Assembly: GCF_963853765.1 (NCBI RefSeq)
Contig: NC_088858.1
Coordinates: 49,600,001 to 49,664,000, forward strand
Direction of reading: 5' to 3'
DNA from: Magallana gigas
Lineage: Eukaryota
DNA length: 64,000 bases
The notes under the pieces are model-generated. The model searched no databases and was not told where the DNA came from. It was given only the letters and a program-made list of their open reading frames with translations. Positions 53,701-56,700 of the stretch are shown one piece after another; the stretch's first letter is position 1, and each line of letters begins with the position of its first letter. Both the position numbers and the translations under genes were made by a program.

Positions 53701-56700
53701 GTTTGATAAAGCTAGCCTAATTTTGGGCCTTTATCAGTTCAACAAAGACGGAAACTGAATTGTCATATCCTGTCTTTTCAAGATAGAGAATTATCACAAC
53801 TTTTGTTAAATGATATAAAGCAAAATATCCAGTACGCCTCTAATCTTATTAAAATGACTGAAAAAAATTTGTCTGCTTTCTACAATTAATAAAATCTGAA
53901 GTGAGTTAAGCATGTTCTGTGTACCTGACTCATTTTTTGAGAGAACATTAGTACATCCACCCTGCTGTGGTTCCCTTGTGATGATAGTGTTACAAGACAA
54001 TAGTACCCGGCAGATACTTACACTATAACTTTTTCTTTAAAATTCTCAAACCCATCATCTTCCTCATCAGAGTACTTGTACACATCAAAGCTGTACTGTC
54101 CCCCCTTTACGTATTGCCCCTCCTCAATGTACTGTTTCTCCTTCGAGTACTGCCCCTCCTCTATGTACTGTCCCTCCTTTGAATACTGCCCTTCCTCTGA
54201 GTTAATACAGGTATATTGCCCTTCATCTAGGTCCGGGGTTTCATCCCCAACACAAGAGTCCACATCAGAATTATCGCCCTGATCAATGGATTTCATCTCT
54301 GTAACACTGGGCTGGTTCTCATCCTCGGAATCAGAGGAGGAGGTGTACTGGTACCCTCCCTGACCCTCAGAACCCCCGGGAGAGTTCAGTCCCGACACAT
54401 TACACTCAAACACTTCTGGATAATCACCCTCATATATCACTTCCATCTCCAAAAAATGAATCCTTTTTCTTTAAACTTCTTTTTCTCTTCAAATATATCC
54501 ATGTAAGTTGTACCATCAGAACCTCCTAATTTCACCAGCACTCAGGTGAGCAGAGTTTTGTGGCAGGTACCCTGGGTCCCCCTCCATGCTCTGTGGTTCC
54601 CGATTAAGGTCAAGTTTACTCTAGGGATACTATCCACCCTGTCAGAGAACTCTACCTGTGTTCACAGCGGAAGTGGAAAATCCAATTGACAGAAAGATAT
54701 TTTTTAAAGTTAAGCCTCTTCACCCTTGCAAGATAAACAGTGAAGTCTGATAGACAATTCTGAGAGCGGGGTCTTAAGGATCGATTTCCTGCCTGTAACA
54801 AAGCCAGTGTTACATAGGGTAGAACACTCACAGAGGAGTCAGCCCAAGACACTGAACATTTAAATATCAGGAGTCCGTGAAGTCCGTGGCAGGAACATAT
54901 GCTACCCGCATCAGTAAATTGATTAGTATGGGAAAAAATAATCCTCTCTATGCTTAAATTGAGAGTCTGGATACAATATGCAAACTAATAAGCCCAACTT
55001 GATTTTTTTATAGTTTGGGAAGCACATAGCCAGTAATTATTTCATGCTGGGTTCTACTTTATCATATTCAAAATAAAATTACAGATCAATATTTTCTCAT
55101 TATCTTTTTTTATTAGTTTTATTTCCCTCATGCAGCTTCCATCCCAGGCATTGGTAGCAAACAGGAAAAATATCAAAAAGGCAAATTCTTGACTTGGTTA
55201 AATTCTCATTTACATTTACTAAAATAACCCTGATTTCCTTGTTTCTAGGTTTTACTAAAGGAAACTTTAACTTTGCCTTAAACTTTTTAATTGGTTTAAA
55301 AAGCAATTGATTGTATAGTTCAAGGTATGACACCTCAAAATTTAGTGTAACCAATACCTTAATAACCAGTACAGTGAATGATTCATATTGAAGAAGAAAA
55401 TAAACTTGGCTACAAAATTCAATAAAATTGATATCTTATTACAAAGACAAGAGTATTTTGATAGATAAGAACCAGCAAATACACATTATACAAAATGGAA
55501 AACGAAAATCTTGTATTTAGCAACATAACTGCCACACTGATGACAGGATAAAATCTGTAACCTTTTAGATTTTTTATAGTTTTCCAATCATTGATTGGGA
55601 ATACACTGAGTGTGGGATACATAAACAAAATAAAGAAAAGCTAAATGCACATTAAAGTAGAATCGATCTCTCTGTATTGTTGGCCTCTTGAGACAGATGA
55701 CTGTTGTTTACCGACTGGAGACGTGGTCTGTTACTAAATACACCCTGTATTAACCCGCCTGTCTTATGTAAGCAGGGCCAGGACTCAAGTATCAAGGTAG
55801 ATCTCGGCAAAAATACACAAAGCCTCGCTACATCAAGTCAGGGAATAAAAAACATGCTTTTAACAAGCTAAAAGCCAGTTATTTTTACATGGAACAAATT
55901 CTGCTAATTGAAAGTAAATAAAGAAATTTTCAAGAACTGTTTTGCTAAATACACACAACATTCCTTGCATTACCCACCATTGTGTCAGCTCAAATTGAAT
56001 GGAGTTTAGCCAAGAAAGTTTACTCCCTATGCCTCAAATCATTGAAATACTAAGAAAAGATATTCTAAATATAATTCAAACAGATACGTCTTTATGAACT
56101 AATCAAACAAACAAATTCCAGTGACATACGCAGACTATGGATATTTTTGAGAGCTTCAAAGTTATTGTCTCTCGCAAATTGAAAGTTAAACAAAGAACTC
56201 TTAACACTGATACAAATGAAATCTCAAAAAGGAGACAACTCCTGTCAATATCAATAAGGGAGATCATTTGTAACTATCTCAATAAGGGTGATAGTTCTGC
56301 TTAATTATAAGAGACAAGTTTATGAACAAATGAGATGAGGTATACATAACTATAGGTATTAGTTGATTCTTAATATAACTGTAATCATGTAAGTTAATTC
56401 TTACTCATCACTATTATCATCAGGTAACTGCTGGTTAGTTGATTCTTACAGAGAGGTAACAACAAGAAAGTGTATTATTACAGAGAGCTTAATACTGTTA
56501 AGTTGATTCTTACTTAAAGGTAATTACTGGTAAGTCGATTGTTACAGAGATGTAACAACTGGTAAGTCTGTTCTTACAGAGATGTAACTACTGGTAAGTT
56601 GATTCTTACTTAAAGGTAATTACTGGTAAGTCGATTGTTACAGAGATGTAACAACTGGTAAGTCTGTTCTTACAGAGATGTAACTACTGGTAAGTTGATT

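What the first reader, a model, noticed from the sequence alone, without database searches (positions are those of the whole stretch)
54022..54680. Hidden alternative first exon in a Daple intron: acidic EGQY-repeat N-terminus for a HOOK-less short isoform
Seen: within the 5.2-kb intron 51841-57010, a minus-strand ORF starts at ATG 54446 (upstream in-frame stop) and runs 141 codons of very acidic sequence. It includes six tandem 18-bp units (54094-54201: EEGQYS KEGQYI EEGQYS KEKQYI EEGQYV KGGQYS) plus a seventh DEGQY. It ends at a consensus GT|GTAAGT donor in exactly the phase needed by exon 51751-51840. An ETS motif GCGGAAGT lies at 54667-54674. Inference: an internal promoter yields a protein that lacks the microtubule-binding HOOK domain and most of the coiled coil but keeps the GBA and PDZ motifs, with a new Tyr/Glu repeat module (candidate multi-site tyrosine phosphorylation or SH2 docking). 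I do not recognise this module from vertebrate CCDC88 proteins.
Basis: partly seen in the sequence, partly recalled or inferred. Interest (0 to 1): 0.8.

Follow-up and report, generated by a model that had tools for sequence, protein, structure and literature searches.

The report
Oyster Daple/Girdin short isoform first exon
An intron of the oyster Daple/Girdin (CCDC88) gene holds a real, conserved protein-coding exon that is transcribed and spliced in frame onto the rest of the gene, probably from its own promoter, giving a shorter protein with a new acidic, tyrosine-rich head, much like the known human short form Daple-V2.

Summary
The minus-strand ORF runs from ATG 54446 for 141 codons. The GQY hexapeptide repeat, the GT|GTAAGT donor at 54022|54021, the matching phase and GCGGAAGT at 54667-74 are all present.

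The segment is single-copy in the genome. It is transcribed from the minus strand. One RNA contig (run X7) joins 54022 to 51840 exactly as predicted, at about a tenth of the depth of the canonical 57011->51840 junction.

Orthologous ORFs sit in the same intron in at least four other oyster taxa. dN/dS is 0.14-0.30, all indels are multiples of three, and GTAAGTA is invariant. It is therefore a translated exon, not a chance ORF.

A first exon with its own promoter is likely but not proven. RNA coverage begins near 54655-54670. The best-conserved block (54650-54800) carries a TATA-like box and an initiator spaced about 32-34 nt apart. No upstream junction was seen, and no 5'-end data exist.

The GQY repeat is confined to one oyster lineage and varies in copy number (3-8 units). 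The conserved parts are the two ends of the exon. Phosphotyrosine docking is untested.

Human Daple-V2 is a known precedent, so this is a new variant of a known kind, of moderate interest.

The parts
54650..54800 (-). Best-conserved non-coding block: putative core promoter of the short isoform
   Evidence: 76-90% identity among three oyster taxa. The 5'UTR scores 30-67% and the intron after the donor 23-48%.
54697..54708 (-). TATA-like box TTTAAAAAATAT
   Evidence: Read from the sequence. An A/T box is conserved in L002 and L006. It lies about 32-34 nt upstream of the initiator-like A at 54674.
54667..54676 (-).
   Evidence: CCACTTCCG is invariant in three taxa. RNA coverage starts 5-20 nt downstream. 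Its function is inferred.
54447..54674 (-). Inferred 5'UTR (about 228 nt) with uATGs at 54587, 54516 and 54502
   Evidence: X7 contig starts at 54655. X21 and X14 depth falls near 54655-54670. uORFs listed. The uATG at 54587 is conserved.
54451..54456 (-). T6/T7 length polymorphism just upstream of the ATG
   Evidence: table 4: extra base in 5 of 6 X21 reads. T7 alleles give ORFs extended by 19 residues from ATG 54502 (P0013, P0017).
54022..54446 (-). Coding part of the alternative first exon: 141 codons plus split codon GT
   Evidence: Orthologues in at least 4 other oyster taxa. dN/dS 0.14-0.30. Predicted disordered.
54090..54197 (-). Six tandem hexapeptide units [EK][EG][GK]QY[SIV] (18/36-bp repeat)
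   Evidence: TRF. Copy number varies from 3 to 8, and two distant oyster taxa have no extra units.
54016..54021 (-). Splice donor GTAAGT. Its TAA is the stop codon if the RNA stays unspliced.
   Evidence: Joint 54022->51840, GT..AG, in X7 contig record 19. GTAAGTA is invariant in three taxa.
51751..51840 (-). Shared downstream exon that accepts both the canonical (57011) and the alternative (54022) donors
   Evidence: Joints. Frame check.
57011..57140 (-). Canonical upstream coiled-coil exon, skipped by the short isoform
   Evidence: Joint 57011->51840 in all four runs.
46359..46489 (-). Downstream exon with the GBA-like motif LLTLEEFLNEANK (46377-46415), kept in the short isoform
   Evidence: Splice sites read. 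The only PDB match is the Girdin GBA peptide 6MHF_C (E 0.67).
44775..46256 (-). Last exon (493 codons, Ser/Pro/Asn/Gln-rich) ending in the PDZ-binding tail EYGCV (44778-44792)
   Evidence: EYGCV is the CCDC88 PDZ-binding motif quoted in PMC8042451.

Best explanation
An internal promoter lies in the 5.2-kb intron of the oyster CCDC88 (Daple/Girdin-like) gene, with a start site near 54665-54680. It drives a transcript whose first exon has two parts. The first is a 5'UTR of about 228 nt containing upstream ORFs. The second encodes 141 residues (123 to about 153 in other alleles and taxa) of acidic, tyrosine-rich, intrinsically disordered sequence.

The exon is spliced from GT 54021 to the acceptor of exon 51840 in the same phase as the canonical upstream exon. 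The product is an N-terminally truncated protein of roughly 1,100 residues. It lacks the HOOK domain and the first 700 or more residues of coiled coil. It keeps about 350-400 residues of coiled coil (enough to dimerise), the GBA-like motif and the EYGCV PDZ-binding tail.

The conserved N-terminal stretch (MEVIYEGxxPExFxC) and C-terminal stretch (SFDVYxYSDDxDGFENFKEKVIV) of the exon are the likely functional short motifs. The GQY hexapeptide array between them is a lineage-specific, slippage-prone expansion.

Shown: the ORF, its expression, its strand, one exact splice junction, synteny and purifying selection. Inferred: the promoter and start site, the full-length product, and any biochemical role.
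For: Sequence features.

Copy number: single-copy, no paralogue.

RNA:
- X7 contig record 19 covers 54655-54022 and is joined to 51840-51811, with GT..AG ends, no ambiguity, depth 8.3. The canonical joint has depth 83.6.
- X21 stranded polyA reads all come from the minus-strand RNA. Depth is 3-6 over 54031-54778 against about 4 on the canonical exon.
- X14 depth is about 121-126 over the exon. It falls to about 15-20 past the donor and to about 21-34 upstream of about 54660.
- No joint or loose end at 54655 in any run, whereas the 57140 junction to an exon outside the stretch was reported as a loose end in all four.

Conservation:
- Orthologous ORFs at the same place between the same two exons.
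- dN/dS 0.14-0.30 with dS about 1.0-1.3 to L002 and L006. All indels are multiples of 3.
- The conservation profile peaks at 54650-54800, at the ATG and at the exon end plus donor.

Host gene: HOOK_N exon upstream. GBA-like motif and PDZ-binding tail downstream.

Precedent: human Daple-V2 comes from an intronic first exon (PMC6702192).
Against: - The junction was seen in only one contig of one run.
- In X1 and X14 the contigs run across the donor into the intron with no junction contig. I attribute this to the assembly dropping short junction unitigs where pre-mRNA is present, but that is an inference.
- X21 raw reads did not reach the donor, so they neither confirm nor deny the junction.
- The X7 contig starts exactly after a conserved AG (54657-54656) preceded by a pyrimidine-rich stretch, which could be an acceptor.
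- X1 and X14 have coverage up to about 55150, and conservation with L006 reaches 55143. An upstream start or exon is therefore possible.
- Three uATGs precede the main ATG.
- All database ORFs end at ...VIV*, so they are unspliced (mostly genomic). A junction-peptide search found no spliced ORF.
- No full-length cDNA or peptide evidence exists.
Confidence: 0.7

Rival explanations
1. The stretch 54655-54022 is an internal cassette ('poison') exon. It would be spliced from an upstream Daple exon into the AG at 54657-54656. Reading in from 57011 gives ..GAA AA|G TAG, an immediate stop. The exon would then truncate the long isoform or send it to decay, and any translation of the 141-codon ORF would need reinitiation.
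For: - The X7 contig starts exactly at 54655, right after a conserved AG preceded by TTTTCCACTTCCGCTGTGAACACAG.
- AGGTAGA is invariant in three taxa.
Against: - No joint 57011->54655 and no loose end at 54655 in four runs, while other junctions, including one to an exon outside the stretch, were reported.
- The X7 contig does not extend 30 nt into an upstream exon as it does at its 3' end.
- The X1 contig crosses 54655 without a break.
- The 150-nt conserved block upstream, with a TATA-like box and an initiator at the right spacing, is more than an acceptor needs.
- Purifying selection on the ORF fits poorly with a purely non-productive exon.
Confidence: 0.13
2. It is a separate small gene nested in the intron. 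An unspliced mRNA would encode a stand-alone 141-residue acidic protein ending ..KEKVIV at the TAA inside GTAAGT. Splicing to Daple would be an occasional by-product.
For: - Contigs in X1 and X14 run through the donor.
- Every ORF in the protein collections ends at VIV*.
Against:
- Depth falls about six-fold just past the donor in X14.
- No AATAAA or ATTAAA within about 150 nt after the stop.
- Bases beyond the stop (GTAAGTA) are invariant while the following intron diverges.
- The database ORFs come from multi-kb contigs that include intron and neighbouring exons, i.e. genomic DNA.
Confidence: 0.1
3. It is a chance ORF in a transcribed intron or in a repeat-derived segment, with no coding function.
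For: Low-complexity, repeat-containing sequence. No Pfam family. No confident fold.
Against: - Single-copy.
- The frame is open in all five taxa despite dS of about 1.2.
- dN/dS 0.14-0.30, and indels only in multiples of three.
- Exon-like coverage and a splice junction.
Confidence: 0.03

Closest known systems
Human Daple-V2 (CCDC88C short isoform, 552 aa; Ear et al. 2019, PMC6702192)
   Same: Its first exon is transcribed from an intron of the full-length gene and spliced in frame to the common 3' exons. The product lacks the HOOK domain and much of the coiled coil but keeps the GBA motif and the PDZ-binding tail.
   Different: - The human exon adds only 5 residues (MSVLS) and lies near the C-terminal region, between exons 25 and 26. 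The oyster exon adds 141 conserved, selected residues and joins further upstream, so about 350-400 residues of coiled coil are kept.
- There is no sequence similarity, and the origin is independent.
- The human isoform is validated experimentally. The oyster one rests on RNA contigs and conservation.
CCDC88 family (Girdin/GIV, Daple, Gipie): the host gene
   Same: HOOK_N exon, very long coiled coil, GBA-like TLEEFLxExNK motif, Ser/Pro-rich C-terminal region, and a C-terminal EYGCV.
   Different: It is the CCDC88-family gene of an invertebrate (the literature reports a single such gene per invertebrate species), not a strict Daple orthologue. 'Daple' is a naming convenience. The acidic GQY-containing N-terminal exon has no counterpart in any hit outside oysters.
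Length-polymorphic tandem peptide repeats in disordered regions (coding minisatellites)
   Same: An 18/36-bp in-frame repeat with a copy number that differs between alleles and sister taxa, embedded in a disordered acidic segment.
   Different: Here it sits inside an otherwise selected isoform-specific exon. No function of the repeat count is known.

Membership tests
CCDC88 (Girdin/Daple) family, host gene | N-terminal HOOK domain | tested here: met
   PF19047 HOOK_N scores 36.6 bits (cut-off 23.5) at G000:C6:49665087-49665224, minus strand, 1.1 kb beyond the window end. That it belongs to the same transcript is inferred from strand and proximity.
CCDC88 (Girdin/Daple) family, host gene | Long central coiled coil | tested here: met
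   Minus-strand exon ORFs of 471 and 285 residues with heptad-rich sequence and many coiled-coil Pfam hits.
CCDC88 (Girdin/Daple) family, host gene | C-terminal PDZ-binding motif EYGCV | tested here: met
   The last exon ends ...NSVWYEYGCV*. The motif is as quoted in PMC8042451.
CCDC88 (Girdin/Daple) family, host gene | [quoted passage not shown] | tested here: inconclusive
   IPQNDLLTLEEFLNEANKD aligns to the Girdin GBA peptide 6MHF_C as the only PDB hit, with the key Phe kept, but E = 0.67. G-alpha binding was not tested.
Daple-V2-type short isoform | Unique exon inside an intron, spliced in frame to the common downstream exons | tested here: met
   Joint 54022->51840 with GT..AG in X7 contig record 19. 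The phase matches.
Daple-V2-type short isoform | Transcription starts at that exon (own promoter) | tested here: inconclusive
   Coverage boundary at about 54655-54670 in X7, X14 and X21. Conserved TATA-like and initiator motifs. No upstream junction. There are no 5'-end data, and X1 and X14 show signal up to about 55150.
Daple-V2-type short isoform | Product keeps the GBA motif and PDZ-binding tail and lacks HOOK | tested here: met
   This follows from exon order on the minus strand. A full-length cDNA was not seen.
Daple-V2-type short isoform | Orthology of the alternative exon with the human V2 exon | tested here: not met
   phmmer against 1.8 billion representatives and a profile search found only oyster sequences. 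The human exon encodes MSVLS at a different intron.
   L002 and L006 taxa have a single K[HQ][YC]S in place of the array. Copy number is 3-8 elsewhere.
   Needs phosphoproteomics or binding assays.

The most novel reading that the evidence does not exclude
Oysters evolved, within one family, a new 100-150-residue acidic N-terminal module for a HOOK-less CCDC88 isoform. Its conserved end motifs, and in the Magallana/Crassostrea lineage a variable array of E-E-G-Q-Y units, would recruit partners such as tyrosine kinases or SH2 proteins to a dimeric scaffold carrying a GBA-like motif and a PDZ-binding tail. A common T6/T7 polymorphism and a conserved uORF would tune its translation. That would be a lineage-specific rewiring of G-protein/PDZ junctional signalling in an invertebrate.
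Probability: 0.12. Interest if true: 0.65.

Novelty: new variant of a known kind. Interest (0 to 1): 0.4.

Why it matters
- It shows that making a HOOK-less, C-terminal-only CCDC88 protein from an intronic promoter is not peculiar to human Daple-V2. Such an isoform has arisen independently in a mollusc, here with a sizeable isoform-specific coding module under selection.
- It provides a clean case of a young (oyster-restricted) coding exon with a length-polymorphic peptide repeat.
- It marks an isoform that automated annotation may miss or mislabel.
- The host gene also carries a GBA-like motif plus a PDZ-binding tail. This bears on the often-repeated statement that the GBA module of CCDC88 is vertebrate-only.

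Tried and rejected
- Repeat-family origin: rejected. There is one copy in the 564-Mb assembly by DNA and by protein. The neighbouring intronic stretches with reads are also single-copy.
- Known domain: none. Pfam gave only a sub-threshold Biotin_lipoyl_2 hit.
- Fold: AlphaFold2 with a 20-sequence alignment gave pLDDT 52, pTM 0.12 and no secondary structure. I read this as disorder.
- Wider homologues: phmmer over 1.84 billion representatives and a profile search found only oyster ORFs. There was also one unrelated bacterial protein with (D/E)xQY repeats (P0005).
- Spliced ORFs in the protein collection: a 56-residue junction peptide found only genomic ORFs over exon 51840-51751. Forty cluster members were read and the fifteen listed all ended VIV*. 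The length window makes this blank uninformative.
- Start-site evidence from Logan contig ends: the contigs proved to be genomic.
- Poly(A) signal for a stand-alone mRNA: none within about 150 nt of the stop.
- Earlier scan notes: nothing relevant.
- Literature on Daple in Crassostrea: none.
- Supplementary table of the MBE paper, to see whether oysters were among the invertebrates with a GBA motif: not held.
- Read laying failed once as busy and succeeded on retry.

Full report
**What is in the sequence.**
- On the minus strand an ORF starts at ATG 54446, with an in-frame TAA at 54473-54471 upstream. It runs 141 codons to 54024, followed by the two bases GT (54023-54022) and then GTAAGT.
- The canonical upstream exon ends at 57011 with two spare bases. 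The next exon (51840-51751) begins after a pyrimidine tract and AG.
- Both donors therefore feed exon 51840 in the same frame. The canonical transcript reads ..DEK-N-RYKALES. The alternative reads ..KEKVI-V-RYKALES.
- The peptide contains DEGQY and then six hexapeptide units: EEGQYS, KEGQYI, EEGQYS, KEKQYI, EEGQYV, KGGQYS. TRF reports period 18/36 at 54092-54198.
- The peptide has 36 D/E against 8 K/R, pI 4.05 and 13 Tyr. It has no Pfam family. AlphaFold2 gives no confident fold (pLDDT 52, pTM 0.12).

**The host gene.** The minus-strand gene is a CCDC88 (Girdin/Daple-type) gene.
- A HOOK_N exon scores above Pfam's cut-off 1.1 kb beyond the window's end on the same strand.
- Long coiled-coil exons follow.
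- An exon with good splice sites (46359-46489) encodes IPQNDLLTLEEFLNEANKD. Its only match in the whole PDB is the Girdin GBA peptide of 6MHF, with T-L-x-x-F-L-x-E-x-N-K kept but a weak E of 0.67.
- The last exon ends ...WYEYGCV, the family's PDZ-binding tail as quoted in PMC8042451.
- The alternative exon lies downstream of the HOOK exon and of at least 700 residues of coiled coil. It lies upstream of about 350-400 residues of coiled coil, the GBA-like motif and the tail.
- A rough sum of ORF segments puts the short product near 1,100 residues. This is an estimate, not a verified model.

**Not a repeat, not chance.**
- The 659-bp stretch and its peptide occur once in the 564-Mb assembly.
- phmmer against 1.84 billion representative proteins, a word-indexed search and a profile search found the same ORF only in oyster-derived Logan contigs. 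The ORFs are 97-172 residues long and form four groups at 90% identity or below.
- Contigs from a more distant taxon (L002-L005) carry the ORF between the orthologues of the same two Daple exons. A second distant taxon (L006) and two close ones (L007; L008/L009) also have it.
- All alignment gaps are multiples of three.
- dN/dS is 0.14-0.30 for every pair but one; the two closest taxa, L007 and L008, give 0.50. Synonymous divergence to the distant taxa is about 1.0-1.3.
- An open frame of 97-141 codons kept at that divergence, with that dN/dS, means the frame is translated.
- The conserved parts are MEVIYEGxxPExFxC at the start and SFDVYxYSD(D/E)nDGFENFKEKVIV at the end. The middle is variable.

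**The repeat is young and unstable.**
- The two distant taxa have a single K[HQ][YC]S where the array sits.
- The close taxa and alleles of the window's own species have 3, 4 or 6 units.
- Run X14 (another organism label) carries one extra 36-bp double unit ('goes back 36').
- The EGQY array is therefore a lineage-specific expansion that is polymorphic in length, not the conserved core of the module.

**Expression and splicing (one call allowed).**
- *X21 (raw, stranded, polyA).* All reads indicate minus-strand RNA. Depth is 3-6 over 54031-54778 against about 4 on the canonical exon 57023-57140. No read happened to reach the donor.
- *X7.* One contig (record 19, 664 nt, depth 8.3) covers 54655-54022 and continues with 51840-51811. 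This is exactly the predicted junction, with GT..AG ends and no positional ambiguity. The canonical junction 57011->51840 has depth 83.6 in the same run and was found in all four runs.
- *X14.* Depth is about 121-126 on the exon, about 15-20 just past the donor, and 21-34 upstream of about 54660.
- *X1 and X14 across the donor.* The contigs run across the donor without a junction contig. I interpret this as assembly behaviour: where pre-mRNA supplies the unspliced path, the 60-nt junction unitig is short and easily dropped. The contig ends coincide with polymorphic sites (54009, and the T-run near 53868). This interpretation is inference. The tool itself warns that contigs show presence, not absence.
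- *Overall.* The splice is demonstrated once and is consistent with the depth profiles elsewhere.

**First exon or internal exon?**
- For a promoter:
  - RNA coverage begins at about 54655-54670 in X7, X14 and X21.
  - The best-conserved block of the whole region is 54650-54800 (76-90% identity). It scores higher than the 5'UTR (30-67%) and much of the coding sequence.
- The block contains a TATA-like TTTAAAAAATAT (54708-54697). About 32-34 nt downstream it contains CCACTTC, a perfect YYANWYY initiator (A at 54674).
  - No junction or loose end at 54655 was reported in any run, although the junction at 57140 to an exon outside the laid stretch was reported in all four.
  - The X1 contig crosses 54655 unbroken.
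- Against a promoter:
  - The X7 contig starts exactly after a conserved AG preceded by a pyrimidine-rich stretch.
  - X1 and X14 have signal up to about 55150, and conservation with L006 extends to 55143.
  - There are no 5'-end data.
- If 54655 were an acceptor fed from 57011, the long reading frame would stop at once (AA|G TAG).
- I put the first-exon reading at about 0.7.

**Translation control.**
- The inferred 5'UTR has three uATGs.
- The first (54587, good context, 23 codons) is conserved in the three taxa aligned.
- A T6/T7 length polymorphism at 54451-54456 decides the fate of ATG 54502. In the T6 allele (the window) it heads a 21-codon uORF overlapping the main start. In the T7 allele (5 of 6 reads in X21) it extends the protein by 19 residues (ORFs P0013, P0017).
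- The conserved start is MEVIYEG, with G at -3 and at +4.

**Comparison with what is known.**
- Human CCDC88C has a validated short isoform, Daple-V2 (552 aa). Its first exon is transcribed from the intron between exons 25 and 26 and adds five residues. The protein lacks HOOK and coiled coil but binds G-alpha-i, Dvl-PDZ and FZD7 (PMC6702192).
- The oyster isoform works the same way at the level of gene architecture. It is not orthologous: the intron differs, there is no sequence similarity, it has a 141-residue selected N-terminus, and it retains more coiled coil.
- I found no paper on Daple in Crassostrea.
- I could not check whether genome annotation pipelines already list this isoform.

**Verdict.** The internal promoter is likely but unproven. 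The phosphotyrosine or SH2 idea is untested and is weakened by the repeat's lack of conservation. This is a new variant of a known kind, of moderate interest.

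Noticed in passing
window 46359-46489 (motif 46377-46415), minus strand: The oyster CCDC88 gene has a GBA-like motif, LLTLEEFLNEANK. The sole PDB hit is the Girdin GBA peptide 6MHF_C, with the key Phe kept (E 0.67). The motif lies upstream of a long Ser/Pro-rich C-terminal exon ending EYGCV. Two papers (PMC8042451, PMC10943482) state that invertebrate CCDC88 lacks this module. The primary survey (PMC4760084) found it in 5 of 43 invertebrate species, and I could not see whether oysters were among them.
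   Followed up: partly
window 54451-54456 and 54502, minus strand: A common T6/T7 homopolymer polymorphism switches ATG 54502 between two states. In T6 (the window) it heads an out-of-frame 21-codon uORF overlapping the main start. In T7 (5 of 6 reads in X21) it is an in-frame start adding 19 residues.
   Followed up: partly
window 54516-54587, minus strand: A uORF of 23 codons has a strong start context. Its ATG is conserved in three oyster taxa, and its stop overlaps the next uATG (TGATG).
   Followed up: partly
protein P0002 (76 aa, 20 member sequences): This is the same ORF with systematic S->F, T->I and P->L/S changes. That is the pattern of C->T conversion, so the ORFs were probably called on assemblies of bisulfite-treated reads and are artefacts in the protein collection.
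   Followed up: no
window 56420-56823: A tandem repeat of about 96 bp (about 4 copies, 78-87% alike) lies in the same intron. Several genomic Logan contigs end near it.
   Followed up: no
L008 2330-2923 and L009 1455-2006 (minus strand of the loci): In one sister taxon a 183-197-residue ORF, cut by the contig end, was called on the opposite strand about 800 nt downstream of the exon. The DNA there still aligns to the window's intron (53874-52736). It was not examined further.
   Followed up: no
protein P0005 (499 aa): An unrelated, apparently bacterial protein has a long (D/E)xQY[AI]D hexapeptide array that matches only the repeat part. This is a convergent low-complexity match, not homology.
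   Followed up: no
window about 55003 (run X14): A contig from organism C matches from 55003 upward and continues for more than 255 nt into unrelated sequence on the other side. This is probably an insertion/deletion or a mobile-element difference in the region upstream of the exon.
   Followed up: no
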